The notes under the pieces: model-generated
Seen by the model: the letters and a program-made list of their open reading frames with translations, nothing else
Databases searched by the model: none
What the model was told of the DNA's origin: nothing
Shown: piece after piece, positions 15,741 through 64,000 of the stretch
How positions within the stretch are numbered: the stretch's first letter is position 1
Layout: each line of letters starts with the position of its first letter
DNA from: Takakia lepidozioides
Lineage: Eukaryota > Plantae > Bryophyta
Length of the DNA: 64,000 nt
Assembly (NCBI GenBank): GCA_030704615.1
Contig: CM060731.1
Coordinates: forward strand, 21,886,001-21,950,000
Direction of reading: 5' to 3'
Translations under genes and position numbers: made by a program

Positions 15741-30589
<14,849 letters not shown>

Positions 30590-38399: not shown

Positions 38400-40450
38400 T
38401 CACGGGAATCGACCAAGTATTTGAAAGATTCCCTGCATTCTAAGTGAAGTAACTCACCTCGCGAGTTGCTCCCCGGGGGGCTTTCTCCATTGTGTGGGTG
38501 CGTTGTCTCGAGAACAAGGTACAGCTGGTGGTGATGGGTTATGACCGTGAATGGCAGGTTGATAAAGTGTTGTGGGTCACCTTGGGCGAACGAGCACAAA
38601 AAACCCTTTCTCAATATCCTTGAACGGATTCAAGGGTATCCTTGGACGCTCACACCTAGGGCCACAGTAAGGTTTTGGAACTTCATCCTCATCTTCCATA
38701 TCTTCCAGTATCTGTGGCTGGATGCCATCCCTCCGATGGTTTGAGGACCAATTTGTTTTCGGCCAAAATCCCTCAAGAAGCTGAATACGATCCGGAATGT
38801 CCTGCATTGGCTTATCAAGTTCAACGTGAATATTTCCCCAGTATTGGTCATATTGTTCCATCACACCCCGGTAATGATCGTCAAGCAACATTCCTTTGGT
38901 CCAAAAATCTCTGTATTTTTTAATACCATTTTTTATGAATGACTGTTTTTCTGAGGAGTCGTCCCTGACTCCCCATATCGGTCTTTTTGGAACAACATCT
39001 GGTTCTCGTTCAGGAAGATATGGAGTCCCATCAGGATTGGACTTCCACATCTTAACGCTGGAGTTTGTAGGAAGTCACTCCGAATCAGTAGCTGACTTCT
39101 TGTACTTCATAACGGGCTAGCCATCCGCATCCTTAAAAAATCGAAAGACGTGCATCTCTGAGATCCCGACCAAAGCCTCATTTCCATTATGAATACAACC
39201 CTTAACAAACTTCTTGAAGTCGGGAGCCTCCTGTGTGATTTGAGGAATGAATTGCATATCTTGGGAGATCATGAATGACCTCATCAAATCCGGAAGAATG
39301 TAGGTGTTGCGTTCCTTTAGCTTCTTCGAGAGATAGCTAAAGAATCCGTCAATATCCTCATGGGTGTGCCCGACCATGAGAAAACCAAGCTGGATCTCTT
39401 CAAAGACATCTTTGGCAGTGAGGAGGGATATGAAAGCAAGCATCCATCTGTTCTTATTGTCCTTGGAGGAGTTGTCCATCTGCAAATAAAGTCGTCTAGG
39501 AAGTGGTCGAGCACCACATTTATCGTGCGGCCTGCAGGGTTTCAGAGCCTCCAAACATCTCGATATACCTCTCATGAGCGTTTCAAAAAAATCATTTTGA
39601 ACTTCAGTGTCAAAAATGTTCCTGGATTCCCGGCATGTCGGCTTTTCCAGTTGGCGCAGGCACCGAGCCAGCAACCCAATTGTGAAGTTTGAATTGTCTT
39701 TCCAGAACTCAAGGGAAAATTGAGGGTAAGCTCCATCTCCGTGTCCATGCGTAACCATTCCTGTCAATGAGACAAGCAACTGACCCAATCCGAAGACCAT
39801 CATGTTCGTCGTCTGTAGCCTCGGAATAGCCGTTTTCTTATGATCTATCTTATCATGAATAATACATAAGAACTCCTCCGGAACCATAACGGACTCATTC
39901 CTCCAGCTATGGTACAGCCTTCTGCATGACTCTTGATGCCTCAAGTGCAAATCAAGCGCCCGCTTATGTGCGACATGTTCGAAACTCCTCTTAATCGACT
40001 TCTTGATCAAGTCTTTGAACATCTCGCATTCTGTGCACTTAGCAAAGGTGCTTCCTGTTTTCCGAACCTCCACGTTAGGAAATATTCGATCCCGTATACG
40101 GCTTATAGCTGGCTGCGAGACTCCTTTCAAACCGAGCAGTCTATTTGTCTGCACCCCAACTCCCCAACAATGTCAACGTCCACCGAGCAGTGGAGGTTCT
40201 ACAAAGTGGAAGAACAAGAAATCATGATGGCATCAAAAAGAATAAAATCATCCACAGTATTTTGAAAAACGAAATGAGACAACGAATAAAAGTCACCTCG
40301 TTGGACTCCTCTCGAATTCTCTTCCAGTTCATTTCGGGTGGCAAAATTCTCAAAGTATCCCGACGTCCCTCTCCAATGCAACGTCCCTCTCAAATGAAAA
40401 CGAGACGGTGTTCGGTAGATGTGATGGAAGCGGACCGTCCAGATAAAAAA
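38400..40450 (-). pseudogene. DDD/E transposase, Sola1-like, disrupted
   Basis: FAKCTEC...HLRHQ...R..Y, IIHDKID, LYLQMDNSSKDNKN, FLMVGHTHEDIDGFFS; in-frame TAG at 39117-39119 continues into ORF 38577-39050; upstream part frameshifted. Superfamily assigned from motif recall. Confidence 0.75.
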
Positions 40451-41264
40451 CATGGTGTTTCGGAACCAGATGAAAAATCCAGTTGGGGGTCTACCGAGCC
40501 GAACAAAGTGTCTGTCAATGACGAAAATGTGACTGTAGAATCCCCGCGGAACGCATCTGAATCTCCGAGCAATACACCTAAAGTCATCTGTAAGGATACC
40601 CTGGCGGAAATAAGAGAAAACGTTCATGTAAACAATGATATCAACGGATCTCCTGCCCACTCCCAAAATTATCCGACATACACCCCTTCAGACTATTCCC
40701 CAGACACATTGGCGGCAATACGAGTGACTGTTTTTGGATATCGAGCATCTCCTGAATCCACATTAGGATCTTAAGGATATTATCCTCCAAACTTCCTCCT
40801 AGACACTGAAACGAGCGGGGGAGTCCTGCAACTACTGGACGTCTCTGGATCTCCAGGATACTCCCCTGCGTCTCCTGATAGTATCACCGGATCCCCAAAA
40901 TATACCCCTCCAGACTATTCGCCTGATACACTCAGAGAGATAAGAATGAGCATTTTGTAGTTCTTGGGTATATAATCTAGAATCGTCTGAATATAGTGCG
41001 AGAAGTTCCTTAGTATATTTTGGACGAATTGGGTTCGAAGATTTCTATTGTAGATTAGTCATGTTTCAGGATGATGTACTCAATGGCTCCTGAGCCTCAT
41101 TTTCATTAAAGTTTTTTTCTTCAACATCTGAAAAAAATGGAGGATTTCCCATTTCATGTAGAAAGACTTGTACATACGAACCTCCATTGTCAGTGGAGGT
41201 TCTTATTTCTGGAATGATAGATGCTAGTAAGAGAGATCTTGTTATTTGATTATCTAATAAATTT

Positions 41265-44200
41265 GTGTTTGGTTGTAACAGAAGACATCCTACACCACCA
41301 GATTGCGTCCCGGGATTGATTGGAGATATTTGTGGCGCATTCATATGCCGGAAGTCCTCACATTTCAAAACTGTGCATACCGCTATTTTTGAGCTTAACC
41401 CAGAGGTGACAGATTGGGGCATCGTGCCTGTCAGTACACCTCCTGATCACAAACTGTCTTTTCATTACAGAAGTCTTGGAGTAATAACAGACTTAAAATA
41501 CGCAGAAGCTCTCGATATAGAGCTTGAATCTGAAGAGGAAAACCTGATGTTGGTTTTGTTCCTGCATGAGGATGCGAGAACCCCCAGGACGTTTGGTTCC
41601 AAAGTGAAGGTGGGTCGTCTGAACAAGTCGTTGATAAGTGAATGCATTGCACTGGGTTTTAGATTTCCAGACGAGGGCTCTGTATTTACAAACGTAGGTT
41701 TGTCGAGGGCCTGGAGTATTTTTCTGGATATTCTGCACGCAATGGGGAATGACATTCGCAAGAAACGAGCACTAGAAGAAGCATCAAAGCTGAAGAGGGG
41801 AAAACGCAAGTCGTCGACAGCCGGCAATGATGACAATGAGGCCGGGACTTCCGCAGGAAAGAAGAAACAGAAGGAGGATCATGATCCAACATTGATGTCA
41901 GATAACAAGAGACCTAAAGTTGGGGAGATTTTTGACAAGGAAAAATGCGAGAAGATGGAGGAGAGGCTCACGAAGGAATACAATGATGTATTTTCATTCG
42001 GATTCGAGAGTACCTTCCTTGTGAAGGTTTCCATGATGGAACTAGCTCCAAGGAGCATGGTTTATAGACCGTTAAATATCAAGCATAAGGACAAAGTGAA
42101 AGCACGACTCTTCCAACTTCATTTGTTTGACTCCAAACATCTGGTGTATCTTGCACCAATCAACCCTTCGATCCAATCCCGAGAAGATTGCTTCATTGCG
42201 ACCGAAACAATGGAAGGAGATGGACGTATCAAGGTTCTTCGTAATTGGTGGACAACACACCATCGTGGCAGCAAAGGTAATGGACTTCATTTCCTCCCAC
42301 ACCTCTCTTTTAACGAACCTCCACTGGGCAGTGGAGGTTTGTATTGAACTACAAAATTGGATATGTCCCCACACTTTCAACTCTCTCACCCATTTTACAT
42401 TAACTGTAGCAGGAACTTCTCGAGGATCTTTCCAACAGCGAACTGAAGGAGTACTTCCGGGAGTGGCCTGCGAAGATTGTATGGTCTACCGATGAACAAA
42501 GGCTCCTGAAGTTGTCCAGGCTCCTCAACGATCCCAATAAGGAGCAAAAGTTTGATACAATAATGCCGGAGAAAGTTGCGTATGCGCGAATGTTATTCAA
42601 CCTGAGGGGGAAGCCAAAGAAATACAACGATCACACCACAAAGTCCGAGACGAAACAATGGAACGTATGCATTTATGGAATCAAAATCTACTATTCACAT
42701 TCATTTTATGCTAAAGAATACTTCTGTTGTCGAAGTGACAACTAATTTATCCCTGAATGAATGTGCAGGAGTTCATGTTTGCCTGTCATTTGATACTAGA
42801 AATGGGTAGCATTAAGGAGGCAATGGTCCTGGTACTTTGCGACGACGACGTTTGGAAGATCTGGGAAGATGTTTTCAAAAACTGGGAGCAGAGAAAGCTA
42901 CTCGACCCGCTTGGGATACAGTACAAGGGTGAACAGCAACAGTTCACAAAATCTGCTATCGCAAAGCTGCAAGGGTTGAACAGATGGCAGCTGATAAAAG
43001 TTGCACAGAAAATCCTGGACCTGAAATTGACCATTCGAGATTACAAAGGTCAAGACAAATCAATTCAAAGCATGAACAAGTACATAGTCGACATGAAAAT
43101 GCGCCGGTTTATTGTCGACGATGTGATGGAAGTGTTGGGGTGGCCTCGGAGGAGCAAACAGTGCACGGAACCGTACACTAAGGACGAGTGGCGTGAAGTG
43201 AAGAGAAAGTACCACTTCAATAAGGCAGAGTTCTCAACATTTAAAGACAAAGTGGGGACGGATTACATCCAAAGCAAGATCAAGATGAACATGGAGACAA
43301 AACCACTCACGGCCGCTTTTGTTAAGTACGTCTCCTCCATCAAGAAAGCTTATGAGGATAGAGAGGATGCCATGGCGATTATTTCAGCGAGTTTCAAGAC
43401 TCATTACGCTATCATGGGTGGAGAAACAAAATTCGCCGATGCCAAGTCCCGTCTGCGACTCGCACCGAAGAAACGGTTTGACAACATAGCGATGGTGTTC
43501 GTCAATACAATTTCTGAAGACGACTTTGTCGTATTTGAGTCCAACGAGTATGTGAACATACTGGAGGCCTTTGTGGCTCTGAAATTGAACACGAGTGCTT
43601 TTGTTTTCTTCTCGACGCAACCGTCCTCGGCCAATCTGGTCTCCTACATCTGAAATGGTCCCGGAAGAACATCGTATCTTGTCCGTCAGGGATTTTATGT
43701 TCCGGGAGAGTATGAAAATATTTACAAAAATAGCACGAAGACTTTCTCTCGGATTGTACTGTGCCTAGACTATGTTATTCCAGCGACACCTGAGGAGATG
43801 CAGAATCCGGACGAGCACATCTCCACCATACTGTTAATCGAGCCAATACAGCCGATTCTGGAAGGGCCCTCTGAGAAGCCATCAGCTTTTGAAGAAGAGT
43901 GCAGGACTTATAATCATGAGCTACGAGCTGACACATACGACTATTTGGCCTCCCTGTTTTGTCGAGACGGGATATCCGTTGTCAACATCTTCGGAGGTGT
44001 GATGTTGACGTATGCCCTTCATGTAAGTGTAAATTTTTTTTGCATTTTAAATACGAATTTTTATATTTTTGATCCAACACGTCCTCTGTTTTACTGACTG
44101 GGTTTATCTGCAAGCAAGAAACATTCGAGTGCTTGACATCAACCACTCAACCAAGAAAAAGTTTTGCAAAGGAAAAGTTGAAGCTAATTTTAAGAAGCTT

Positions 44201-44821
44201 CAAATTGAGAATGACAATGTTGCTGAAGAGGTTGACGGCGGAGACGATGATGAGGATGAGGAGGAGGAAGATGAAGACTTGGAAGAAGAAGGCGGACATT
44301 CCGAACACGTAGAGGAGGATGAGGGCATCGATGGTAACGGGGACAACGAGGGCCACGATGGTGACAATGCAGACCGTTGGGAGGCTGGACACCTGGATGT
44401 GATTCAGGACTTCAGAACTCAGTCACATGATGGTATTAAGAACATCACCCAAGACGTTGCGGTCCACAATGTCATGATTCTAGATGGGGATTTGTCGAGT
44501 TCAAGCGAGAGAACTAAGAGTAATCTTGCTTCACCATCAAGGGGTGCGGAGGCGAGCTCAATTGAGGTGCGCGGCAATTTGATTGGGAGTGCAGACGACT
44601 GGTTCAAACCTGTAAAAGGGGACGAGCCGGCGCCAATGTCCCCGTATCCCGCGAAAGAGAGGGTAGAGAGAGCGAGGACAAAGAGCCTGTGTCCCACAAA
44701 AGACAGTGGATACAAAGGGAGGACTAAGAGCCCGTCCCCCGCAAAAATGGATAGTGGTGACAGAGGCAAGACTAAAAGCCCGTCTCCAAGAAAAAACAGC
44801 GGAGGCAGAGGCCATACTTAG
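41265..44821 (+). pseudogene. Spliced gene with a ParB/Srx-like domain, a possible degenerate DNA-methyltransferase-like region and an acidic/SP-rich tail
   Basis: VYRPLN...FFVIGGQHTIVAAK|...WPAKIVWSTDEQRLLKLSRLLN; introns 42277-42412 and 42665-42768; frameshift near 42180; in-frame TGA 43651-43653; YDYLASLFCRDGISVVNIFGG near 43940-44000. Confidence 0.5.
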
Positions 44822-45384
44822 AGCCCAACTCGCGCTCAAAGTGTCTCCTAGCATGTCAATTTGGATGTAGGTAACGAATGACACCTGGAGATTTATGGTG
44901 TCTTCAAGCATTATAAATGGAACAAATTGTGTGTATTGCATCTGGTTGTGTTCTGGTTGTGTTTTTGACAATACCTGATCTGTATCTTAATATTTCCCAC
45001 ATTCTTGAAATTTACATGTGACTGACGGTAAGAAAACTCGTATAGATCCATGAACGGAAATTGGAGGAAATCACACAAACTCGGACATAATCCATCGCGA
45101 CTCAAACAGTGAGGAGGCAAGTGGACTTAACAATAAGGGTCAGCCCAACTGATCCGGTCAAACAAACAACCTCCACTGCCCAGTCGACGTTGCGAGATGG
45201 AGGAGATGAGCCGGAGATGGTCGTTGCTCACCGTGAAGGAAAAGAGAGCGAGCAGCACCATCAGCAAATTCGGAACCCCTCCCCGAAACGGGTATACACC
45301 TCATAACCATCTTAGCTATGTTCTTCTTGGTCCTTCTTCTACTTTACAAAATAAATTAATTGTTCTGTTATTCCACAGGATGAT

Positions 45385-46119
45385 ATGATTCACCCTCCAA
45401 TCGACTATCACAAATATGTGAACCCACAGGATTGGTATCGCCTCTCTGAGGGACCGAAAGGATCTCGACCAGGATACTACGTCCTGGTTCTTGACGTCGG
45501 TTACCTTGGTGAGGTTTACATCCGAGATGGCCCGAGATCCCCTCCCGCAACCCATCCTTGTGTGTGCATTGGAAAATTCAAGCTTTCAGTCCGAAATGGG
45601 TTGGACGACTTCCTGAAATGGGTCCTTGAGCATTTTGAGGTCTACTTTTGGAACACTGGACCGTTAGAAAATGTCCTGGATATATGGCTGGCTTTGTTTG
45701 GAAGAAGGTTTTACAATGTCAGGGAATTCAGCAATGAGAACTGCGTGAAGCATAGACAGACGTACAGTGCCGAATGGCCCAAATATCCGAAAGCGCCAAT
45801 ATATCTTAAACGTCTCTACGACCTTTTCACTGTAGATGACCCTGTAGCGTACAAATCAAACACACTTCTTATCGACACTGTAGAAAATATGTATAAGTCG
45901 TATTTGAACCCAAAGTTGTTCGGTATCTTCCTTCCAAAATATAAAGCGCTCGTCGACCCATACAAGGACATGTTTCTTCTTGATGAACTCAAACCGCACC
46001 TGGAAGAGTTGTGGTTATCCGGAAAAGACGCTGATATATTCAACGTGGAAAAACCCATAGGATGTCCACCGTATAATGACCCAAAGGTCAAATGCCTCTT
46101 GCTATGGGATTTGCAGTGA
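45385..46119 (+). CDS. FCP1/NIF-like HAD-fold protein, degenerate motif I
   Basis: VLVLDVGYL, VRNGLDDFLKWVLEHFEVYFWN, YLKRL, NTLLIDT..KSYLNP. Confidence 0.7.
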   Translation: MIHPPIDYHKYVNPQDWYRLSEGPKGSRPGYYVLVLDVGYLGEVYIRDGPRSPPATHPCVCIGKFKLSVRNGLDDFLKWVLEHFEVYFWNTGPLENVLDIWLALFGRRFYNVREFSNENCVKHRQTYSAEWPKYPKAPIYLKRLYDLFTVDDPVAYKSNTLLIDTVENMYKSYLNPKLFGIFLPKYKALVDPYKDMFLLDELKPHLEELWLSGKDADIFNVEKPIGCPPYNDPKVKCLLLWDLQ

Positions 46120-46232
46120 CAGGTTTATCTTAGAAAACAAAAATTTCCTGACGCTTCATTGGAACAATTTGAAACGTAGATGGCTGCTCTAGATTTTCAT
46201 GAACCTCGACTGTCCAGTGGACGTTTCTCCCA

Positions 46233-47017
46233 ATGTCAATCCTGTCCTTGGTTTATCTTGATTACCACTTGAGTGGATGTATGAATTTCTCACAGATTGC
46301 AGCAGCAGTTTCTCCAGTTGCGAAAGGATTGCACTTGATAATTTTTTACCTGAATGGAGTTTTGTGCAAAGTCTTGAAGCACCAGAAGAGCTACTGTGTC
46401 CCCCGAATGTCCGAGACAGACTACAAGATACCAGCTTTTGTTGGATTTTGACTTGTCTATAGGCGGGAAAAATATCGTGAGATGTGGACAAAGTTGAACA
46501 AACATTTCCGTCTAGGTATATGGAGCTGCATGATGTACAAGAACTTGCAGTCTATACTAGACTTTATGCTTCAGGGTCTTCCTCAGCCGGCATTCGTTAT
46601 GTCTCAGGAAGATTGTATCTCCTGTCCTACTTCTGTCCACCCTCAATTATATCAGGATACGACCCGCCGAGTCTGTTCTTGAAGCCATTGATGACTGTCT
46701 GGCAAAGATTTGGTGGTCAGTACAACCTGAGTAACACTCTACTTATTGACGATTCAGCTATTAAGTGTGTGTTGAACCAGCCTGAATCCTGTCTGATTCT
46801 AAAATCGTTTGAATCCGTTGAGACGGTCTCTTGCTATCTCCAGAAGGTTCTTCAGAAATATTTGCTTGGAATCAAAAAATCTCACACGGTTTCTAGTTAA
46901 AAGAGGATAGGACTTAAGCCTTGTCAGAATGTTTCCACCGATCCCAAGTTTAAGCCTCTCCTGGATTATGTTGATGATTCTAATTACGGGAATCTCCGAT
47001 ATGATGCTTCAAAATAA
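46233..47017 (+). pseudogene. Second FCP1/NIF-like gene, frameshifted
   Basis: MYEFLTDC, FRLGIWSC, FVMSQEDC, FLKPL, NTLLIDDSAIKCVLNQP spread over several frames. Confidence 0.7.
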
Positions 47018-48614
47018 AGATTTTATTGATCAACCACGTTTGTGATTCAATGTTTATTTTTGATTGGTTTTTTTATAGGTTGTATTGTTTTTCTAGAAAA
47101 ACTGTTGTGTACTGTGATTTCCTTTTCAATCTGAATTGACATGGAATTGTTTGCTATTTCCTAGTCTCATCCAAGCGTTTCTCCACCCCATACCATCCCG
47201 ATCCTCTGAGATACAGGCCTTCTCCGAAACTCGTCTCGGGGGTTTTTTCAAATCCGACAACCTCCACTGTGCAGTGGAGGTTATCCCGTGTCTGTACATT
47301 GATCTTATAAGTTCGTTTCTGCAGGTTCATGGCGATGCTGCTGATGCCAACTTCTTGTCGGGACCTCCATTGGAATCCTCCATATCAAAAATTCGTCTAC
47401 AAAGGGACAACATTCACACTACTGTTGAGATTTCTGTCATCGACGGTGAAGCATCATCCAGGCACTTGGCTTCCCTTCAATTGCACGACCCTCTTCTTCA
47501 GTCCATTCTTAAAAATGATGTTCTGTCGCAGGATTGTTTAGGATTGAATGTCGCCGATGGAAGCCAACTTGACAAATGTGCAGGGGATTTCGTGGACCTC
47601 ACTCTACAATATTCACCCTCCGTGTTAAGTGTCAATGGTGTGAAGTCTACCTCGAGAATGTCATCCGTTGAGGACGCGGCTGAGACTGCGGCTCCGCAGC
47701 ACAATGTTGCCTCTCTTCCCTCCTTCTCTCCCCAGCACGAAGGTTGGACAGCCCAAATCAAAAGAAGCCAGGTAAAATTACTTATATCTAAATTCTAACT
47801 CGTCCTTTTGTTTTCCTTAGTACTGGGTCTGATGTTCTTGTTTTACTCCAGGCCAAAAAATCTGCGGATTGTGACCTTCCTGTCAAACGACGTCTTCATT
47901 GGAAATTTGTTCCGAGGTAATCCCTTCGTTACGTGTGAATTCCATTCAGGATGTGGAGTGCTCAAGGGACAATTTCCATTCCGTTCCCCTTCTCCGAAAC
48001 CCTTTCGACGAGGACAAGGACGAAACTTCAATTGCAACTTCTGGGCTTCCCAACCCTGCAGTGTTGGCGCAATGTTCTGCACCGAGGAAGCGGAATAGGG
48101 CCCCCAAACCATTTCCATCTCTTCTACAAATCGGTTCCACCGGAAAGAAGTCATTCGTCAGAGACAAAGCAGACTCGAGGAAGAAAAGGAATACCTCGGA
48201 CATACCGGGGTCTCGTCAAAACACGTCCATTGGGATGCTAAGCCCGCCAGCGAGACTTTCCAATAAGGCGACATCGGTATTATTCGATATCGTTCGTTTG
48301 GTTATGCACTAATTAACTCCATCTTTTCTCAACAGACGGGGATGCAACACGATACCTTCATCAATTTCCCTTCGTACAAGATACTTTCCTGAACCTCCAC
48401 TTGATAGTCGACGTTCCTCTTCTTAGCAATATTAACCCTCCTCTTCAAACATTCCAAGCCCACAACATTGTGCAGTATTTTGCCATTTTTTGCACAATCG
48501 TGTTGATCTTCCATACACTCAATCATTCTGGGTCGTGGGTATTTTTCATGGCAGAAACACTAATGTCAGTGTGTGATTAACCTGCTCAGGATAACTTTGT
48601 CTCTCATCCTTTAC

Positions 48615-49200
48615 ATGCAACAGCGGGGGAAGAGGAAACGGATGTTGTTAATTTTGAGTGTCAACGGACTCCTCTGCTACCGGCCACCCCCAACCGGCGG
48701 TGAACTGTTTAAGGAGAAATTTCGTTTCAGGAATGTGACACTTCAAGTTCCCGACAGACCGTTTGTGGTGCCTCGGCCTAGAGTCTTGGAGTTTCTGGAC
48801 CTTGCATTGAAGCATTTTCACGTGGCCATTTGGTCATGTGCTGATAGAGGTGTTCTTTGTAGGATGTTGGAGACCTTCGTCCCCACGAAAATAGCAAAGA
48901 AGTTTTGCTTCATATGGTCTGCTGAGGATTATAAGGATACCACCGGTTATATCAGGCCCGAGATGAAATATCTCGTGAAGGATATTCGAAGTGTTATTGT
49001 CAGGTACCCTGTTGCTACGCAAAGGGCAAATACTTCTTGTAGATGATGAGCCATCAAAAGGCCTGCGAAACCCACAAAATATTGGATTCATCCCTTTCTC
49101 ATTCAAGCCTTTACCAAACGGATTGCATGACCGGGATGATATGACAAAAGCAGTGTGACCATATATATCGGAGATGGCTGGAGCTTCAACAATCGTTGAT
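48615..49200 (+). pseudogene. Third FCP1/NIF-like gene, frameshifted
   Basis: LLILSVNGLL, PRPRVLEFLDLALKHFHVAIWS, FIWSAED, LVKDI, then ILLVDDEPSKGLRNP in another frame. Confidence 0.7.
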
Positions 49201-51365: not shown

Positions 51366-52845
51366 CTCTTGTCAGTTCAGAGCGTCAGAGCCTTACTGGA
51401 TTCCTGGAAGACTTGTTTGCCCCAAACCGCTTATTTCTTCCACTTTTCCAAACTTTGCCATTTCCAGCCTGTTTCCTTTATAAAAGAAATAAAACAAAAT
51501 CTTGGTATTGGTAATACCTCCATAAATCTTGGTAATACTTACTGCCATTTGTTTTTCCAAGAATAGGTAGCTCCATTGCAGTGCCATGCTAAGAAGTTAA
51601 TGTGCCTTTTTAAAAAAATCATTATTATGATTATTATTATGCGAGTTTTAAAAAAAAAAACAGCCTGGGACAGAGGCCCTGATGAGAACTTTATTTAGGA
51701 TTATTTGGGGAAAAAATTTTAAAACCCCCCATACACCATTAGGCACGGTAATCGTGAATATGTGAATCAGCCCCTCGTTTTTTGTTTTTAAGAAAACAAT
51801 TCAAGGACGTTAAAGAAACTTTATCTTTATCTATATGTATATATTAAATTTATTATTTTTATGTTGATAATTGAGGGGACCACTGTGGGCAGGGCCACCC
51901 AGGTGAATCGAGGATCCTGCCACCTTGTCGGACTCCTCAAGGCTATTTTTATTTTTTATTTTTATTTTTATTCTTTATTCTTTATTTGTAAACAGGGGAT
52001 TGAAGCCCTGGTTAATTTTATTAAAAAATCTGAGGAAAAAATAACCTCAGGAAACAACCATGGAGGATGAAAAAGGACTCGTCACTGCCCCGTAACCATA
52101 AGCACGAGAGGCTTTTTATTTAAACTAGAAAGTTAAAAGGAAGTTAAGAGAAAGTTAAAAATTGGAAGAAGAGGGGAACGTGGGAACTGTCAAAGTCGCG
52201 AAATCTAGCCTAGGCCCTATATTCGCGGACGGCGCAATCGCACAGCACCGGCGGGCCCCGGTCCCGGCCACCTGCTGATCAGGTAATCAGCGTGAAAAGA
52301 CTCTCCTTGGATTCCAGGCGACCGGGGGTCGGCGGTGGACAAAACAGGTCACCTCGCAGCTCACGTCAGCGCCAAGCTGTTTGTCTGCGGGAGAGCAAGG
52401 AAGCTCGCTCGTGCGAGTCAAGGAATGAAGAAGCTCCATACATACTACATAGTGTCGGAGCTTCTGATCTTGCTTGTTGAGGGCTGAGTTCAGTGCCAGG
52501 ATAATTCCGACATTTGTTTCGCTCAGTCATCGTCCATTTCGGAAATCTGGTAAGGGATCATAGCCGGAATGGAGATGTGAGGAAGGAATTTCGTGGATTG
52601 CATTGGAAACCACTAGATGGACGCGAAAGTGCGGGTGCTGAAGAGATTGGAAGAAAAGAAGCATGCGGGAACGACATTGCAGACGTGATAGACAGTAAGG
52701 TGGATGGATGCTGTGAGAAGAGAGCCATGCGAGGGGGACACACAATATTTTTAGGCCCACAGGGCTTCTGCAAGGCGCATGATAGAGCCAAAGGGAGGGA
52801 GAGAGAGAGTGACGCGGGTTGGAAAGAGAAGAGGGGGGCAGATAC

Positions 52846-55800
52846 ATGAAGAGGTTAAGTATGGGTGTGGGACAGTGTCAGAGAAAAATGGCGATGACAG
52901 TGCTTGCTATGATAGTGGCTGCTGCGCTTGCAACACTTGGCTGTCACGCACAAAGCACCACGGATGCAGTAGCGTACCTCGACAATATTGAGAAAGAAGT
53001 GAGGAAAATCACACAGAATGTCGTCGACAACTATGTGCACACTTGTGGTACACTGCCCCTCCTCTCTCCCTGTCTTTCTCTCTCTGCAACCCTTACCAAT
53101 TTTCCCAATTCCTCTTTTGTACCCGACCGTCGCTAGGACCTAACAGTGAAGCATTGCTTGCGGGTGCAGATCTCGTCGCTTCATGTGGGAACAATAACTG
53201 CTCTAGGCAGGCCTGCATGCCACTGCAGGGGGATAACAATCTCTTAACATGCAAGCGCGTGGCCTCGAATCAAGTCTGCAATGGAAACGGCTGCCAGCAG
53301 TTCCCATTCTCTTTGAAGAGAAGTTTCGTGAGGTGAGAATTAACAGAGTCCAACCACGTCAGGATCTTTTTCGGCCAAAACAACAGGAATTTAAAAAACC
53401 AAGAACTTGAAACCACTGTGTCATTCGTGTGCAATGCAAAGGGATACTTCTGCCTGTGGGTTTTCCACAGTGGTAGCATTGCAGAACTTACTTGAAGTCA
53501 GTCATGAGTACGTTAGGAACCTGCCCTCAATTTGCAGTCACAAAGCTGATGACTGGAAGGTATGGTTCCGGTTCGCACCGACTCTCCCTCTTCCCTTCCT
53601 ACCATCATCCTTTTGTTTCCAGCCTTAATATCAGGAAACCCACACTGGACATCTGTCACTTCCTCACACCTTCTAGTTAGATAGGCACGAATTGATGTTT
53701 ATATCCACTTGCGATTGCGAATATCCATTGGATGTCTGGTATGTTGTCTGCAGGCTCCCCAATGTGGCTCTGACCCTCAATGAGGCCAACTATTCAATCT
53801 GCAGCCAGCGGATGCTCGATCCGACTTTCCAAGGAATTGCACAAAATCATGACAGTTCACTGAACCTCACTTCATGGACCTACTTCGCATCTGTGGAGGG
53901 AGTCCACCGAGCTTTCCCTGGTCGAGTATGTTCCCAGCCTCCCTCATCATGCCCTCTGAAGGACAACTGAGTGAGGATGACAGCCTAGATAGAGAATTTT
54001 GTTGTTTTTGGCATTTAGGAAACAAGAGAGAAATGAAATGAAATGAGAGAAAAAGAAAGTATTCATAAGACGTTGTTTGCCGTAGCCTTGTGGCCATTGA
54101 CCCCGCGCTCAGTTTGAGCGGAACACAAAGGGACAGAGACTACCGTTGTCAGGAGCTGATGCTGGTAGTATGATGTACCTTGGAACAGACTATCAATCCG
54201 AGTTTTCCAGATATCCTCTAGAAATCCCTTCACACAAGCATCGATCTGCTGTGTGTGGTTTGCCCGATAACTAGGCCCCAAAACGGCCTGGGCTTTTGGC
54301 TCAGCCTCGAGACTTTTGAAGTTGGTAAACAGAGGTTCAGGCACAATTCCCTTGATGGGTTTGAAGAGGGCGTCTCTCTCATGAGTTTACCCAGGACAAT
54401 GAATCAGAAATGAATATTGTCTTCAGGTTGCCCACACAACGGGCAATTGCAATCCCTCTTTCCTCTCTGCATCTTTGTGCTGTTTAAAGGTAGGCTTCCC
54501 GCCCTGAGTTTAAATTTCAGTCTAGTGCCGAGGGCGGGTAAACCCTTGAGGTCATCCATGATAGCCTCTCCCATGTCACAGACTGGAAACAAGTTCAGGG
54601 AAGTTTTCTGCCTAACTTCATTAATGAGAATGAAATGAAATGAACTGGTGCTTTATAACGTCCGCGGAAAGCTCATGAGAGAAAGAATGTACTCATAAGA
54701 CGTTGTTTGCCGAGAGAGAGAGAGGGGACAAGTGTGGAGGAGGGCCTGTCAAAAAATCTAGGCAAATGGCACACTAGGGGCTAATAGGTGTCCTTTGTTG
54801 GAATGCAGGATGTGCCTGCGACGAACTGCGCCTTTGAGCCAAGAGAGCGTCCATGGTAGTCATTCTCCTGCTTCTCTTAAATGGGTTTGACCTTACTTGT
54901 ATTCCTCATTTCCATGCAAACTGCAAATGCGTGCATAGCTGCAATATAATTTTGTTTCTCTCTTTATATGTCTAGCAATTTAAAGCCAGTGCTCTCGTTG
55001 GAGTTGCACCTTTCTTTTGTGCTTTGAAATATGATCTTCAGATCCCTTCCCAAACAAATTTAGAGGGGTTTCACCTGTTAGATTTTGTGTAATTTGTATT
55101 TGTCTAGCGCAGTGAGGTCATAGAGTTCATGTGTTTCTTCTCTCCCATTTTTGTCTTTTTCTCATTTTCCGGGTTTCTCCTGTTCTTGTGCATCTGATAG
55201 CTCCTCTGGGCTTGATACTTTCTTCCTTCTTCGAGCTCCATGTCGATGTTATGTAGTTCTTTTCTTTTGGTCTCTTCCTTTGTGTCTTCGTTTCTTTCTT
55301 TTTGCCACAAGGCCATTGCAAGTTAAGACATTCTGCTTCTGCACCTCTGTCCCCCATTTTGATTCCTGCCCTCTCCATTCCCTGCTATTGCATTCTCTGG
55401 GAGAGTTTCGTTTCCTCCGTGGCTGACAAGATCATTGGGAGGAAACTAATTGTCTGCGGTAGAGCAGTTAATTGGTGGACTAATGAGATTAAACTCAAGA
55501 TAGCTGAGAGACGAGCCCTCTATAAAGAGTGCTGCAATTTGGAAACCAACAGAGAATTGTGGGTGAGGTACTACCAGCTTCGTAAAGATATCAATCAGCT
55601 TGTTAGGTCTCAGAAGAAATTATACTGGGACAAGTTATACAGTGAAATGAACTCAAACCACCATGGTGGTAATGACAAGAAATTCTGGTTGGCCCTTCAA
55701 CGTTTGTACAAGCCGAAAAACGGTCAGCAAGTACAAGCGCTGAAGACTACTAAAGGTGCAGTGGTGACTTCATCGGTTGACATTGTCAAAACTTTTGAAA

Positions 55801-58800
55801 CTCACTACAGTATCCTTGGCAGAACTTCTAGGTCTAACAGTGAGGGGTCTTCTGCTGAATGGAGGGACACAGTTGGAAAAACTGTTCCTATGATTCAAAA
55901 CAGCCCTGATGAACTGGAGTATATTTCAATGGCTTATAATGCTCCCATTAGTTCTTCTGAGATTGTGGATGCAATTGAACATTTAAATGGATATAAAGCT
56001 GGTGGACCTGATGGTATTGTCAACGAGCTTATCAAGCACGGTGGCGATCCATGATAGAGGCCCTAGTTCTCCTCTTTAACCTTATCTGGAAGACTGAAAT
56101 GATCCCCTTTCGCTGGCGACAGGGGGTCATTGTCAATCTATACAAGAAGGGTGACAGAGAAGAACCGGGGAACTACCGTGGCATCACGCTCCTCAATGCT
56201 GTTGGCAAGACATTCTGCAGAGTTATAAGTACTCGTCTCGAGGTTGATCTGGAGTCTAGAGGTTGTTTCCACGAAGGCCAAGCTGGCTTTCGGCGAAACA
56301 GGGGCTGTGTGGATCATATCTTCACTCTAAGCCAGATTATCCAGGGAAGGAAAAAAGAAGGGAAACCCACTTATGTCTTTTTCCTGGATGTCAAAAAGGC
56401 TTATGACACAGTGTGGAGAGATGGCCTATGGTTCCGCGTCTGGTCTTGTGGGATCAAGGGAAAGATGTGGAGAGTTGTCCACAACTTGTATGCTCACACC
56501 AAAAGCTGTGTCACTGTTAACGGACAGAAGTCCAACTTCTTTGACATAGACCAAGGTGTAGCTCAAGGATGTACTCTCTCCCCTCTACTCTTCAATGTTT
56601 TCATCAATCAACTCCTCGAGGATGTGGAAAGTGAGGGATTTGGGTTAAGGGTGGGTGATACCACCATACCAGCCCTTATGTTTGCGGATGACTTCGCAGG
56701 CATAGGGGAGACTCCAACCAATCTCCAGGAATTGATTGATTGCGCGAAGAGATACTTTGATCTTTGGGGGCTAGAGGCTAATGTCAGCAAATGTGCAGTG
56801 GTAGCATTCAACGACAGAGGAGAGGGAGGAAGTGATCTTAAGTGGCAGTGGGGTAGCCAAGAGATCCTGGTCCTCCAAACCTACACTTACCTGGGCGTTG
56901 AGTTCTCCTCCAATTGTAATTGGGATGCACATATCCGGAAAGTTGTTCAAACTGGCAAGGGCAAAGCTCTGGGGCTCACTAAATTTTTCCACTGCAGAGG
57001 GGTCACCTCTGAGGTTAAGAAAACCATGCTTTGTCGCGTTATTAGACCTGCCTTGGAGTACGGATCTGCTATATGGGTTGATAACTCCAACCAGGCTAAG
57101 TCTCTAGAATCCATTCAAGTGGGGGTGCTTAAGGAGTATATGTCAGCATGCTCCAAAACAGCCAATGTGGCTGTTTGGCGTGAGTTTGGCATTCCGTCCT
57201 TAAGCTCCCGACGAGATGAATTCAAGGTCAGATGGTGGAGTCAGCTGCAACATATGCCCAACACCAGATATCCTAAGTTAATCGACTCTATATCTTGGAA
57301 ACAGGACCGCCCTGTCAAACAGGCTAAGTCCTGGCAGAAGAGAGTAGAAGAGATCCTCAAGGACCTGGACCTGGATCCGCAAGTCTTGACCCTGCTGGAT
57401 AAATCTGACTTAGAGGCTGTAGTGTCCTCAGCCATGTCTGTTGCCATGAGATTGTCTGATGAAAATGAAGTTAGGCAGAAAACTTCCCTGAACTTGTTTC
57501 CAGTCTGTGACATGGGGGAGGACATCTTGGATGACCTCAAGGGTCTACCCACTCTCGGCGCTAGACTGAAATTTAAACTCAGGGCAGGAAGCCTACCTTT
57601 GAACAGCAAACAGAAGCAGAGAGGAAAGGGAGAGTGCAATTGCCCGTTGTGTGGGCAATCTGAAGACAGTATTCATTTTCTGATACACTGTCCGGGGTTC
57701 TCTCACCAAAGAGACGCTCTCTTCAAATCTATCAAGGGAATTGTGCCTGTACCCCTGTTTACCAACTTTGAAAGTCTCGAGGCTGAGCCAAAAGCCCAGG
57801 CCCTCCTGAGGCCTAGTTTTGGGCAAATCACACACAGCAGATTGATGCTTGTGTGAAGGGATTTCTAGAGGATATCTGGAAAACCCGGATTAATTCTATA
57901 TATGAAGGTAAGTCTTACTACCAACGTCAGCCCCTGACAGAGGTAGGTTCTGTCCCTTTTGTTCCCGCTCAAACTGGGCGCGGGGTCAATGGCCACAAGG
58001 CTACGGCAAACAACGTCTTATGAGTACAATCTCTGCAGCATGCATAGTGTGCATACTTCCCCAAAGAAACATCACTAATCAGCTTCCTGGGTTGAGGAAG
58101 TAATGACATCTTGTAGGCAACATCACACCATGGGACTGGCCCTCACCCCAAAGCATGAGCCCTGAACCCAAAGGGCACAACAGTCAGTCAGTCTACGTTT
58201 ACCTTGACTAAGGATGTTGGTTGCCACTTATATATGCACTGAAATTTTTTATTGATGATTGCAAATTTGCTCTGACCATATGAGGTCGAGTATACAATAC
58301 AAACTACTAAACTGGCAAACAGTCTTCAAGGTGCATTAGTGTTTGCAAAGAATTTGTTACAGGGATTATGAGAGGTTCTTGAGTACTTTCCACATTTGGC
58401 AGGTACAAGGGTGCCATAGCTGTGACGAAGGATCTCATGGTGCTCCTTGATGCTGGAAATTCTATGGGGGAAAGTCTCACTTCTGACTTGTTGAACCTGG
58501 AGAGCAAGTTTGCAGCAGCTGTGTCAATTGTGTCAGAGCTTTTGAACACCTTGGTCCATGGAGATCGAGTGACCATTGTGCGGTTCACCAGTGCTTCAGC
58601 AGCCTTAGTTCATCAATCGGTATGTTGACCTGATTGCTATCCCAACTTTAGGCTACCACTGTGGCTACTGACTTGTTCTGCTTAGTGAAGATCTTGCGGG
58701 TGCAATTGATTTCCAAGTCTTAAGAGTCTTTCTTATCTTAGATGCATTTCTTCTGCAGCTGACAGCTACAACAGGTAATGCAACAGACCTTCAACCACTG

Positions 58801-61800
58801 AAGGATGCCCTTCAAGTGCTCACCACCGACACTAATCAAGGAGCATCAAATATAGAGGCAGCATTTCAATTGGCTAACCAGACATTTGAACCTCAAAGCA
58901 GTGCTCTCAAGGTATGATAGCCAAAATATGCCAAACTATGATGTTTGCATTTAAGACTTGGCTAGGTGTACACGTATCTAATATTTGCTTGTCGAAATCC
59001 ACCTTCCAAACGGAAGGCAGTAGCCCTTCGGGGTGAAGTGACACCATAAGTTACGCTTGCTTCGGCGAGAGTCTCCCTTTTTCGTCCCTTTGGTTGTCAT
59101 AGCCTTGTAGCCATAGAACCCAGGCCAGGCCCTACCTCTGCTTTTGGAGGCCCAAAGCCTAATCACAGTGAGAAAGGAAAGAGACAAAGGAAGGAAGTTT
59201 ATATCGTCCAGAGGGATCCCGAAGGCACATGGGACAAAGCAGAACAAGCTTCAGGAAACAGCAAACCATGCCTGAGATAAAGTGCCTCATGCAGCTGGGC
59301 TGCCAGGCATGGATTCAAATTCGAAATTTCCTCTAATAAGCTGTGTCAAGAAGAGAGGGAGACAGAAAGCAAGAAAGAATTAAAGAGATTTATGCACCCA
59401 TGAGGTGGCAACCCTGGATCCCACCTATTTGGATCTAAGGAGTACATGGGAAGGGCAGAGGAAAGAAAAGGGCTCTATTTTGAGACATGTTAACATGTGT
59501 TTTTGGGGGCATGGGCAGGTTATCTTGACATTTACAGATGGGCAATTCACAAGTCAGAGCCTGTCAACTTCGATCCTCGACAGCCTTGTTCAACAGCAAG
59601 TGTTGATACAGTTCTACAGTTTTGACCGGTTAGACACCATCAAGCAACACCTTTCCCAGGTTGCCTGCTATGTCAATGGTACATATGAGAGAATATTGGA
59701 ATCGGTGGCGAACCCTCTGTGGACGATTAGGTCGTACTTTGGCATCATAGCAATGCTTCGTCTCAGGGCTCTGGGTGATAATCCATACTGGACCCTACCT
59801 TATCCAGATGACGGCAGCTTGGGGACGGTCATCACTGTTGCTTACCCTGCATTTGCTCCTGATAATTACACTCTCATTGGAGTAGCTGGCATCGATGTCC
59901 TCATGGAGGAGTTGGGTTCAATTGCAGAATCTGCTTTCACCATTGCTTTACAGGATCGCCTCAACACCGAGCCGGTCCCCAACCTGACACCATCACCTCT
60001 CCCTTGCAATGTAAGCACCTGATGTATGCATAGACCTTGTGATTGATTCTGTGAGCCATGTCATTGGCTAGATTTCTTTCTGGCTAGGGCTCTCTTTGTG
60101 TATTTTAGGTAATCTCTTCTTTTCTTCCTCCCCATGCACAGAATCCTGACATATGCCCAATTTTCCACTGTCCATTGTAGGGAATCCCACACCTCTCTTT
60201 GGCCTTGTGTGGATGTTGTAAACGTTCCTTTCTTTCTTTGCTTCCAGAGTTCAAGCAGAGCAGGCTGATATTTTTTTCTTGGACAGGTGCAACTGTCAAA
60301 CCTGAATCAGTGCCAGAGTGTTCAAGCACCCTCAAATCCTTTATGTTTGAAGACAGACACAAGTGGTATGTCATTTGAACAGCGGGTGTGCACTTGCCAA
60401 CCAGAGTGTCAACCCTCCTCTAAGCGGTTGACAGCTTCACAGATCAGTGGAATAGGCGTTGGCGGAGGGGTTTTCCTTTTAGTATTTCTTGCCATTACCT
60501 TCCTTACCTTCCTTGTGATCTATCGGAAGTCTAAGCACCGTGGCAGTGGAACATCACCTGCAACCGGATCAGTTGTGAAGGGCACCACTGGAGATGCTCA
60601 TCTTGCGTAAGTACAAGCACCTATCAAAATAGGGTCTTTATGTTGTCATTGTTCTTCCTAGCAACAGTGGTATGTCACTATGTTAACACATTGCTTGGAA
60701 GTCTTGATTGTTTTGTCAAATGAGGTGGACTTGATGAATCTTGAGAGTATGTTTCTCCATCACTCTCCTCCACAAGACAAAGAAAGTCAGGAAGCGACAA
60801 AAGAAATGATACTGCCTGCACCACCCAAATACAATACCCGACTGTTGAAACATGGGCAGGCTTTACTGTTCAACAGATGGGGACATTGCTTGATATTATT
60901 CACAACCTTGAGTATTAGTTTGGTTGGCAGTTTGGTTCATAAGAAATATGAGATCATGGGTGTCAGATCCAATGCTGGTCTGCCACAATTCCATATCTCA
61001 TGACTGAGCTTTCTCCTTCGTTGCTCGTTGCCTTGATTCAGGGAAATGCCGAGACTAGAGGCACACTCATTGCGAGCCAGATCTGGTAGCTGGGGAAGCC
61101 AAGCAAATAGAGATTTGATTGAATACACTGAAGGACAGCTCCAAGAAGCAACAAAAAACTGGAGCGATGGAGTCCTTCTTGGGACGGGTGCCCATGGACA
61201 GGTGTACAAGGGGTGCTTCAGTGATGGAAAAATTGTGGCAATAAAGAAGCCCACAGTAAATGTTGAGATGGCTTGCGATACGTTTGCGACAGAGTTGGAG
61301 TTGTTGTCCAAGCTCAACCATAAATGTCTAGTACGTCTGCTGGGTTATTGCAAGGACAAGAGGATCCTAATTTATGAATTCATGGTGAATGGAAATCTTT
61401 CAGATTGTTTGCATGGCAAGCAAACAGGTCAGAGGCTTGGCTGGGAGGAGCGGCTACGAATAGCCATGGGAGCTGCCAAAGGACTAGAGTATTTGCATGA
61501 ATATGCAAAGCCAAAAATCATCCATGGGGATGTCAAACCAGCAAATATTTTGCTTGACCAAGCCTTGGATGCACATGTTTCAGACTTTGGCCTCTCTCTC
61601 TGGAGCCAAGATGCTGAGATGTCCTATTTGTGGGCAAGCCGCATGGGTGGGACTTTAGGGTACTTGGATCCTGAGTATGCTTCCTCAGGTGCCCTCACAT
61701 TTGGGAGTGATGTGTACAGCTTCGGAATGGTTCTACTGGAATTGATCAGTGGACGTAGGGTGGTTGTAAATTCCATTAACATCGGAACCTGGGCTACTGA

Positions 61801-62023
61801 GCTTGCTGAACAAGGAAATGTTCGGGACATACTTGATCCGAGCTTGGAAGAACCTACGAACATTGAAACCATCTATGGTCTGGTTGAACTTGCTCTCGAT
61901 TGTGTGCAACAAAAGAGGCAGGCTCGCCCCAAAATGAAAGAAGTGGCAGCCCAACTCGATGGAGCCCTTACTGCTTGGAAGCCCTGCAATAGGATTCCTG
62001 AAGATGCCATTTCTCCAAGATAG
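52846..62023 (+). CDS. Receptor-like kinase with an alpha2delta/CACHD1-type ectodomain (signal peptide, Cys-rich, dCache_1 split by VWA, TM, Pelle kinase), about 915 aa
   Basis: Exons 52846-53047, 53170-53332, 53754-53925, 54809-54855, 58403-58619, 58759-58911, 59519-60010, 60287-60606, 61042-62023 sum to 2748 nt in frame, all GT-AG. The start could be ATG 52861 or 52888. Motifs YFASVEG..RAFPG, FEPRERPWY, KDLMVLLDAGNSM, FTDG, WTLPYPD, LIGVAGIDV; TM GIGVGGGVFLLVFLAITFLTFLVIY; kinase GTGAHG, VAIK, HGDVKPANILL, DFG, GTLGYLDPEY. Confidence 0.92.
54030..54725 (-). mobile_element. Nested family A and B LINE 3' ends in RLK intron 3
   Basis: A fragment at about 54058-54620 sits inside a B (ATTTC)n tail; B end at 54628-54677; a 30-bp A end at about 54685-54712 next to (GA)n. 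Confidence 0.85.
55398..58034 (+). mobile_element. Young 5'-truncated family A LINE with near-intact RT in RLK intron 4
   Basis: 601-aa ORF with all RT motifs (ALMFADD) and the Zn finger; single-base frameshifts near 56050 and 57820; short TSD tctctg. Confidence 0.95.
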
Positions 62024-64000
62024 GACTGAACTGGAGTTCACCATGGAGTCATGACTGATGAGCAGCACCGGGCGTAAGTGATCACCTCTAGCTGCTCATT
62101 TTCTGGAATCCCTTGGATTTAGCCTTGTAATTTTAACCACTATAGAATTGTAAAGTTTCCTGTATATCAGAACCATGGGGATTGTCCATAACTTAACGTG
62201 ACAATACCCGTTTGTGTGTGCAATATAGAATTTCTCCTTTTAGATCAGCATTCATCCACTGGCAACTGCAGCTGCCTGATTTCATCCCTTGGGAAAGATC
62301 ACTTGTGGAAGTAGTCTATTCATTGGTGCCTGAACGGGATAGGGTTGGGGGCCAAGCACTTTGAGTAGCCAATTTTGATGGGGCTGACAGTTTGCATTCA
62401 AAAAACATTGGTGACCTTTTTCAGAGGCACCTTGTTTGCTTATGGTTATTCATATCAAGATCCCCTTCCTCGTCAGCATCTGTGGGGTCCCGCATTTCCG
62501 TTCTCGAAGCTTTGGTGGACCGGTCACAACCAACAACAGGGGACATTATTCTCAGGGGACACGATTTTGCAGGTATAGTGGCTTGGTGTGGTTTCTATGA
62601 TGAAAGTACTATTGAGTGTTCAAAGCTTCCAAACACGATGGTTCTGAGGTCCAGATTCTTGTGTGCCCCCAATGAGGAGTGGGGTCCATATCAACTAGGT
62701 TTGGATCCAGACAAGGAGAATGAATGCTTTCATATTCTCACTGTATTCCAGTGGATGGGCGGAGATTGGGACTCCATCAAGCTGATTGATGCTCTTCCCT
62801 CCCCTATTTGGAGGATGCTTCAGCTGAATAGTTCTCTGCAAGTCTTATCCGTTTCAAGATGGATCTCATCTTCGGCGTTGACTGAATTGTTGAGATAGCT
62901 GTAGGTGAGTCATTTGTCACACGTCAGAGTTTACTGGAGTTTACTCTAGAGGTTGGTTGATTGTGAAGCCCTTACTAGTTAGTCTTAGTTTGGTCTGTGC
63001 TTCACATTCCTTTGCATTCAAACCAAAATATCGTGGGAGGCTTGGCCATATTCTTCCAAGGCCCAAGCAATGGGGATACTCTTTGAACTCTATAGATGCC
63101 AGTTTCGGTATTAAGGCTGTGCAGATCATTGCTTACTTGATGTTGGATTTGGGGGTTTTTCCTATCTGTTCATTGAAAGATAAAGAGGGACTCAGAAATG
63201 GGCTTGAGCGATGAGTTCCGTGTCATTCTTGCCATAGACCCCATGCCTCATGTGGTTGGAGCAGACTCGGTGGGGGACAGCGGATTCAGGTCCAAGGTCT
63301 CACTTGCTGCTTACAACGTATACTTGGTAGGTCACAACAATGCAATTCACTTCTAAAGCAAGTTAGTTCCGTAGTTAGTTCCATAGTCCCTGCACATAGT
63401 AATAAGTACGGCATGTTTGAGCTCATTGAGCATGGTTGATTACCCGTGATAACAACACTCAGGAGAGTTGGCTAGTAATGGTTCCAAGTTTTTCTGTTAT
63501 GTTGGAACTATTTAGTTCATTGACTGCAATTTCTCTTGCTTTTCAGAAACCCGAATCTGACCTGTTGAGACTCTTTTACATCGTCTTTGGCATGCCCACC
63601 CATTTACTGCCTTGTCCAAAAACCTCAAAGACCAATCTAGATATGTGGACCCCCACACTAGAAACAGATTGCAGAAACAGAGATGGAGGGAAAAGCCAGG
63701 CCCTAGCGAACTTGCTAACAAGGGAGAAGGATGGAGTGAATAGTGGCTTAGTAGAGATTGCGAGAGAGATGAAATGTTGTGCTAGGGCAGGAACTAAGAG
63801 AAGTAAGAAGAGAAGTAAGAAGTGAAAGAGTGACGGATATGAAGCAATCCCGAGAGACCGTTGAGATTGAAGAGGCAGCAAGCTGTTCTAGAAATAACAG
63901 AAGGGAGGTCCTGTGAAGATGAAGTGCGCAGCTCGGAGGTGATGAGCTGTGGAGAAAAGGAGCTGGAGAAGGAGCTCGGAGATGCTGCAGTAACATAGTC

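What the first reader, a model, noticed from the sequence alone, without database searches (positions are those of the whole stretch)
52846..62023. Plant receptor kinase with an alpha2delta/CACHD1-like ectodomain: candidate amino-acid-sensing RLK
Seen: the spliced protein follows the order found in animal calcium-channel alpha2delta subunits: YFAS..G..R.FP, FEPRERPWY, VWA (KDLMVLLD...FTDG), WTLPYPD..GTVITVAYP..LIGVAGIDV, then TM and a Pelle kinase. Established: dCache_1 amino-acid sensors use YxxxxRxWY...YxD...D, the gabapentin/leucine pocket of alpha2delta, which is split by a VWA insertion in eukaryotes. Here R, W, Y and both D residues are kept, with Y>F at the first position. Inference: a cell-surface small-molecule receptor kinase of a class I do not know from angiosperms; functionally uncharacterised as far as I know. 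The key motif is invisible in the ORF track.
Basis: partly seen in the sequence, partly recalled or inferred. Interest (0 to 1): 0.88.

Follow-up and report, generated by a model that had tools for sequence, protein, structure and literature searches.

The report
Moss receptor kinase with gabapentin-type pocket
This is a real, spliced moss gene for a cell-surface kinase whose outer part is built like the gabapentin- and leucine-binding subunit of animal calcium channels; the layout was mentioned once in 2022, but I found no test of whether such proteins let plants sense amino acids.

Summary
Confirmed. Nine GT-AG exons (52846-62023) give an open 915-aa protein: signal peptide, alpha2delta-like ectodomain, one TM, RLK/Pelle kinase. 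One RNA-type contig joins exons 5-9 and carries exon-4 letters across the LINE-filled intron. Orthologs occur in Sphagnum, Physcomitrium and Ceratodon. The Sphagnum ectodomain model (pLDDT 91) matches alpha2delta-1 best (Z 29). All amino-acid-motif residues are present, and F at position 1 is allowed by the published motif.

It is not a new class. Gumerov 2022 (PMC8915833) already reported VWA-split dCache_1AA Ser/Thr kinases in streptophytes; I found no functional study.

Added here: only the distal Cache module is present, and a six-cysteine stalk replaces the proximal one, so it is not a true double Cache. The MIDAS is imperfect and the kinase is non-RD (HGD). Relatives carry no kinase, other Pelle kinases, or an MLKL-like kinase.

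Best reading: a receptor for an extracellular amino acid or similar molecule that signals through a co-receptor (0.55). Binding is untested. The scan's earlier notes showed no other case.

The parts
52846..53047 (+). Exon 1: start codon (52846, or the in-frame ATG at 52888), signal peptide, start of the Cache stalk helix
53170..53332 (+). Exon 2: Cys-rich insertion in the VWA_N-like region
   Evidence: 44-58% identity to orthologs; Cys conserved across the family
53754..53925 (+). Exon 3: first strands of the distal Cache module (YFAS...RAFPG)
   Evidence: Pfam VWA_N weak hit E 0.03; 60-72% identity to orthologs
54809..54855 (+). Exon 4 (47 nt): motif residues F188 (54833-54835), R193 (54848-54850) and two bases of W195
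   Evidence: loose end of RNA contig X1 record 1 is this exon
58403..58619 (+). Exon 5: end of W195, Y196, first part of VWA with imperfect MIDAS (D-A-G-N-S)
   Evidence: Pfam VWA_2 E 4e-5; RNA contig
58759..58911 (+). Exon 6: middle of VWA
59519..60010 (+). Exon 7: end of VWA (FTDG, Cys368), C-terminal half of the Cache pocket with Y413 (59801-59803) and D444 (59894-59896), first stalk Cys481
   Evidence: Pfam MCP-like_PDC_1 E 7e-4
60287..60606 (+). Exon 8: cysteine-rich stalk, transmembrane helix (about 60452-60523), basic stop-transfer, juxtamembrane
61042..62023 (+). Exon 9: intact RLK/Pelle kinase, non-RD (VAIK, HGDVKPAN, DFG, GTLGYLDPE); both RNA runs carry an in-frame 3-nt insertion at 61982
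   Evidence: Pkinase E 8e-39; best PDB hits are plant RLK/Pelle kinases such as SYMRK, BRI1 and BAK1
55398..58034 (+). LINE retrotransposon segment inside intron 4 (RT ORF 56051-57856); spliced out, not part of the protein
   Evidence: RVT_1 E 7.5e-34; 96.8% identical to a copy at 19422-22018; no exon-4/5 interruption in RNA
54045..54681 (-). Inverted 3' fragment of the same LINE family inside intron 3
   Evidence: 88% identity to 57464-58027

Best explanation
A single-pass plasma-membrane receptor kinase of a moss-wide ortholog group. Its ectodomain is a cut-down alpha2delta/CACHD1 relative: stalk helix, one distal Cache module split by a VWA domain, and a six-cysteine stalk instead of the proximal Cache module. 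Shown: splicing into one open frame, the fold (on the Sphagnum ortholog), motif residues F188/R193/W195/Y196/Y413/D444, and intact kinase motifs. Inferred: R193 and W195 hold a carboxylate and Y413 and D444 an amino group of a free amino acid or close analogue in the apoplast, as in PctA and alpha2delta-1. Inferred, weaker: with no proximal module or second TM helix for a bacterial piston, pocket closure changes the Cache/VWA surface and recruits or rearranges a partner (an RD co-receptor kinase, or a kinase-less paralog), which activates the non-RD kinase. The output is probably a stress, damage or microbe response, with nutrient sensing as the alternative.
For: Splicing across ectodomain, TM and kinase. 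AlphaFold model pLDDT 90.6, pTM 0.92; top structural hits alpha2delta-1 (Z 29.4, about 400 residues, rmsd 4.4) and CACHD1 (Z 23.9), above plain VWA (about 20). Residue-level alignment to alpha2delta-1 across both motif halves; the family profile also hits PctA, PctB, PctC. Motif conserved at about 25-30% overall identity: R 52/52, W 49/53, Y 66/70, D 61/67. Fits the published generalized motif, with 30 residues between Y413 and D444 (PMC11237719); R and D are absent from the amine and purine motifs respectively. All tested prokaryotic motif carriers bound amino acids, and R241A/D491A abolish gabapentin action on alpha2delta-1. [quoted passage not shown]
Against: No binding or signalling data for any plant member were found. 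In alpha2delta-1 the pocket affects trafficking, not transmembrane signalling. The motif is equally kept in kinase-less relatives, so its conservation does not show kinase coupling. Motif validation was on double-module prokaryotic domains. The structure was modelled on an ortholog (about 60% identical), and pocket geometry could not be measured. The non-RD link to immunity is only a correlation.
Confidence: 0.55

Rival explanations
1. Works like alpha2delta: an amino acid sits in the pocket as a folding or trafficking cofactor, while the real signal is a protein or wall polymer bound by the VWA face. The kinase then reports a macromolecular ligand.
For: Closest structures are alpha2delta-1 and CACHD1, where the pocket controls surface expression and the VWA contacts partners. 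The motif persists in kinase-less members. The proximal module is missing.
Against: The MIDAS is degenerate and variable across the family (D-A-G-N-S here), whereas the pocket residues are nearly invariant.
Confidence: 0.25
2. The pocket binds something other than a free protein amino acid: a non-protein amino acid, a peptide end or a microbial amino-acid derivative. The receptor is then a narrow pattern-recognition receptor.
For: Clade-fixed F at motif position 1 and non-RD kinase; lineage-specific paralog expansion; a paralog fused to an MLKL-like kinase.
Against: F is within the amino-acid motif; all amino-group and carboxyl-group contacts except one hydroxyl are kept.
Confidence: 0.17
3. 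Artefact or dead gene: a chance joining of exons, or a gene broken by the intronic LINE.
Against: Open 915-aa frame, spliced contigs in two studies, nine of nine exons collinear with orthologs.
Confidence: 0.02

Closest known systems
Streptophyte dCache_1AA-VWA Ser/Thr kinases (Gumerov et al. 2022, PMC8915833)
   Same: VWA-split Cache ectodomain with the amino-acid motif, fused to a Ser/Thr kinase, in a non-flowering plant. Very probably the same class (the paper's dataset could not be read).
   Different: The paper calls the domain dCache_1; here only the distal module is present. It gives no kinase subtype, no stalk and no experiment on plant members.
Animal alpha2delta-1 (CACNA2D1)
   Same: Stalk helix, VWA inserted in the distal Cache module, motif in that module, a Cys at the end of the VWA at the matching place.
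   Different: No proximal module, no second dCache, imperfect MIDAS, about half the length; a true TM helix and cytoplasmic kinase instead of a channel-subunit role.
CACHD1
   Same: Same fold (Z 23.9; profile E 2e-39); single-pass membrane protein (own knowledge).
   Different: CACHD1 keeps the motif in its second dCache and has no kinase.
Bacterial dCache_1AA sensors (PctA, PctB, PctC)
   Same: Pocket motif; profile hits E 5e-9 to 2e-7.
   Different: They have two modules, two TM helices and no VWA insertion.
Moss orthologs: P. patens XP_024368104 (auto-named THESEUS 1) and XP_024396876, Ceratodon KC19_6G023200, Sphagnum BDL97_14G043000
   Same: Same domain order, 50-65% identity, HGD kinase, F-type motif; one clade with 100 support on both ectodomain and kinase trees.
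   Different: Uncharacterised. The THESEUS 1 name does not fit: no malectin-like domain was found and the kinase does not group with the CrRLK1L rows.

Membership tests
dCache_1AA (amino-acid motif) | N-terminal half [YFWL]xxxx[RK]xW[WYF] | tested here: met
   F188, R193, W195, Y196; motif text in PMC11237719; aligned to alpha2delta-1
dCache_1AA (amino-acid motif) | C-terminal half [YF]-x(27-34)-D | tested here: met
   Y413 and D444, 30 residues between them; aligned to the alpha2delta-1 Tyr and Asp
dCache_1 (double Cache) | Stalk helix plus membrane-distal PAS-like module | tested here: met
   Ortholog model and structural match; profile match
dCache_1 (double Cache) | Second, membrane-proximal PAS-like module before the TM | tested here: not met
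   Profile matches to alpha2delta-1, CACHD1 and PctC stop at position 421-423 of 504; no beta-sheet after the motif Asp in a confident model; 81-94 residues with six Cys and no proximal signature in the plant kinase members; no Pfam hit
dCache_1AA (amino-acid motif) | Binds amino acids | not testable with these tools
   Needs thermal shift or ITC
Eukaryotic alpha2delta/CACHD1 type | VWA inserted in the distal Cache module, splitting the motif | tested here: met
   VWA aa about 205-390 lies between the motif halves
Eukaryotic alpha2delta/CACHD1 type | Two nested dCache_1 domains | tested here: not met
   Ectodomain about 500 aa with one module
alpha2delta-1/-2 | Perfect MIDAS DxSxS...T...D | tested here: not met
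   D-A-G-N-S against D-V-S-G-S
RLK/Pelle receptor kinase | Signal peptide, ectodomain, one TM, Pelle kinase in one transcript | tested here: met
   the signal-peptide exon is supported by orthologs, not RNA
RLK/Pelle receptor kinase | Catalytic residues VAIK, HxD, DFG | tested here: met
   activity itself not testable
CrRLK1L (THESEUS1) or WAK | Malectin-like or GUB/EGF ectodomain; kinase within those clades | tested here: not met
   No such domain; kinase forms its own clade, and the WAK sister link of the quick tree is lost in the careful tree
Streptophyte Cache-VWA kinases of Gumerov 2022 | Listed in that paper's Dataset S3 | not testable with these tools
   No supplements held

The most novel reading that the evidence does not exclude
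This family is a plant receptor kinase that directly senses free extracellular amino acids through the gabapentin-type pocket, using a single Cache module. Bryophytes wire the same sensor to several outputs (non-RD Pelle, RD Pelle, MLKL-like kinase, none) as a damage- or microbe-sensing system that flowering plants lost.
Probability: 0.3. Interest if true: 0.87.

Novelty: new variant of a known kind. Interest (0 to 1): 0.6.

Why it matters
From my own knowledge, plant amino-acid sensing at the cell surface is credited mainly to glutamate-receptor-like channels, and a receptor kinase that binds a free amino acid would be a new input type. Here the ligand class, the exact residues to mutate and ready-made pharmacology (leucine, gabapentinoids) all follow from the structure, and Physcomitrium has orthologs that can be knocked out. 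The single-module ectodomain is also a natural minimal alpha2delta, useful for asking what the gabapentin pocket does without a calcium channel. The score is held down because the architecture was published in 2022 and nothing functional is shown.

Tried and rejected
Single-sequence AlphaFold of the Riccia relative failed (pLDDT 34) and was discarded. First ectodomain tree was void because of a script error. The idea that the kinase is WAK-derived appeared in the quick tree (89) but not in the careful tree: rejected as unsupported. The idea that the Pelle kinases of this family come from several independent fusions was tested: one clade is not rejected (p-AU 0.17; the two MLKL-type rows were left out), so it is not claimed; only the MLKL-like kinases are clearly a different family. 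The six-Cys stalk matched nothing in Pfam or PDB (a talin hit at E 0.065 is noise). Amine and purine Cache motifs were considered and do not fit. Paper searches found no functional study, but most subscription journals are not searched, so RLK surveys may already list this ectodomain. The scan's notes showed no other case in this genome. The exons were joined only inside local scripts, to check the frame and number residues.

Full report
Gene model. Reading 52000-64000 gives nine + strand exons: 52846-53047, 53170-53332, 53754-53925, 54809-54855, 58403-58619, 58759-58911, 59519-60010, 60287-60606 and 61042-62023. All introns are GT-AG, the phases agree, and the frame is open for 915 aa, with hydrophobic peaks at the N-terminus and near aa 540-560. 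Exon-wise Pfam scans give VWA_N (weak), VWA_2, MCP-like_PDC_1 and Pkinase in that order. Intron 4 holds a LINE segment and intron 3 an inverted LINE 3' fragment. The W codon of the RxWY motif is split across intron 4.

Expression. Two runs from different studies hold about half the words of 58380-62100, as expected for exons only. One 3213-nt contig of X1 joins exons 5 to 9 at the predicted sites, and its loose end before 58402 is exon 4; X2 shows three of the joints. So ectodomain, TM and kinase are on one transcript and the LINE is spliced out. The contig has 1030 nt before exon 5, against 584 nt for exons 1-4, which leaves about 450 nt of leader if the model holds.

Relatives. Exon 7 finds 78 representatives. 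The closest are full-length kinases of Sphagnum, Physcomitrium and Ceratodon; exons match them collinearly at 32-80% identity. The window gene falls in this clade with 100 support on the ectodomain tree (exon 7 alone, quick tree) and the kinase tree, branching deep. More distant members are liverwort kinases (HSD), a Physcomitrium RD kinase, two Ceratodon proteins with non-Pelle kinases, many kinase-less TM proteins in liverworts, mosses and Selaginella, and protist proteins such as one from Diplonema. No angiosperm name appeared among the ectodomain hits I could name. The source is a moss by homology.

Ectodomain. The Sphagnum ortholog ectodomain hits alpha2delta-1 (E 6e-10), CACHD1 (3.5e-6) and PctB (0.003) by sequence; the 70-sequence profile gives 4e-64, 2e-39 and about 1e-7 to 1e-8 for PctA/B/C. 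Its AlphaFold model is confident (pLDDT 90.6, pTM 0.92) and matches alpha2delta-1 best by Foldseek (E 3e-21) and VIA-align (Z 29.4, 399 residues; also first in the wide search). The motif residues F188, R193, W195, Y196, Y413 and D444 line up with the alpha2delta-1 pocket and fit the published generalized motif, which allows F first (PMC11237719). Across the family R, W, Y and D are nearly fixed, and F is fixed in the moss ortholog clade. The MIDAS is imperfect.

What differs from the published description. Homology to alpha2delta-1, CACHD1 and PctC ends just after the motif Asp (profile position 421-423 of 504). In the model a helix and a sheet-less cysteine-rich segment follow. In the plant kinase members 81-94 residues with six Cys separate the Asp from the TM, and the proximal-module signature seen in two-Cache protist proteins is absent. 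So this is a single distal Cache module, not a double Cache. The structural alignment ends with model residues 450-453, at the first stalk Cys, on alpha2delta-1 residues 1071-1075, and Cys368 aligns with the VWA Cys of the alpha2-delta bridge region. This hints that the stalk is tied back to the VWA as delta is; I could not read the coordinates, so it is a lead only.

Kinase. It is an RLK/Pelle kinase (best PDB hits are plant RLK/Pelle kinases such as SYMRK, BRI1 and BAK1, then IRAK4) with intact VAIK, catalytic Asp and DFG, and Gly in place of the RD Arg. HGD is shared by the ortholog clade. It forms its own branch and is neither CrRLK1L nor demonstrably WAK. [quoted passage not shown]

Mechanism. 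Shown: architecture, splicing, fold of the ortholog, motif. Inferred from PctA and alpha2delta-1 mutagenesis: the pocket binds an amino acid. Inferred from general RLK behaviour (own knowledge) and the missing proximal module: activation by ligand-dependent partner recruitment rather than a piston. I give this 0.55, the alpha2delta-like cofactor reading 0.25, a different ligand 0.17 and artefact 0.02.

Prior art and verdict. [quoted passage not shown] No functional paper was found, within a library that lacks most subscription journals. The finding is real and testable but the class is known in outline; the single-module build, the non-RD kinase and the varied outputs make it a variant worth following. 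The joined-protein search and fold were left out; the ortholog stood in.

Noticed in passing
P0099 (Ceratodon KC19_8G097200), aa 560-1246: A paralog has the same Cache-VWA ectodomain and TM followed by a weak MLKL_N/RPW8-like region (E about 0.006) and a kinase whose best PDB hits are 6lba and 6ka4 (E 7e-37; Arabidopsis MLKL-like proteins, from my own knowledge). It may be a surface receptor fused to an MLKL-type module. P0100 (KC19_2G286500) groups with it on the kinase tree, on long branches.
   Followed up: partly
P0012, P0014, P0021, P0027, P0036, P0039, P0061, P0063, P0102, P0137: Many kinase-less single-Cache-VWA-TM proteins in Riccia, Marchantia, Physcomitrium and Selaginella, several with neighbouring locus numbers in Riccia, mostly keeping the motif: a receptor-like-protein counterpart of the family.
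   Followed up: partly
P0050, P0075: Unnamed eukaryote-type relatives add a C-type lectin domain between the Cache-VWA unit and the TM.
   Followed up: no
XP_024368104 (P0086): The Physcomitrium ortholog carries the automatic name THESEUS 1, which does not fit its ectodomain.
   Followed up: yes
window 52399-52845: If the transcript leader is unspliced it is about 450 nt long with nine upstream ATGs, one opening a 70-codon frame that overlaps the start; possible translational control, or the leader is spliced.
   Followed up: no
window 61982: Both RNA runs have an in-frame AGT insertion after the kinase domain relative to the window: allele or assembly difference.
   Followed up: no
window 8374-10757, 19326-29430, 54045-58034: Many copies and fragments of one LINE family, up to 97-98% identical, suggesting recent activity.
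   Followed up: partly
window 17018-17990: Exons that look like an ATG6/Beclin-1 gene (recognised from memory of the SFVVLP motifs; not searched), with LINE copies just downstream.
   Followed up: no
window 38577-49046: Transposase-like ORF on the minus strand and several FCP1/NIF-phosphatase-like ORFs, probably a large DNA transposon (also noted as s1-477351).
   Followed up: no
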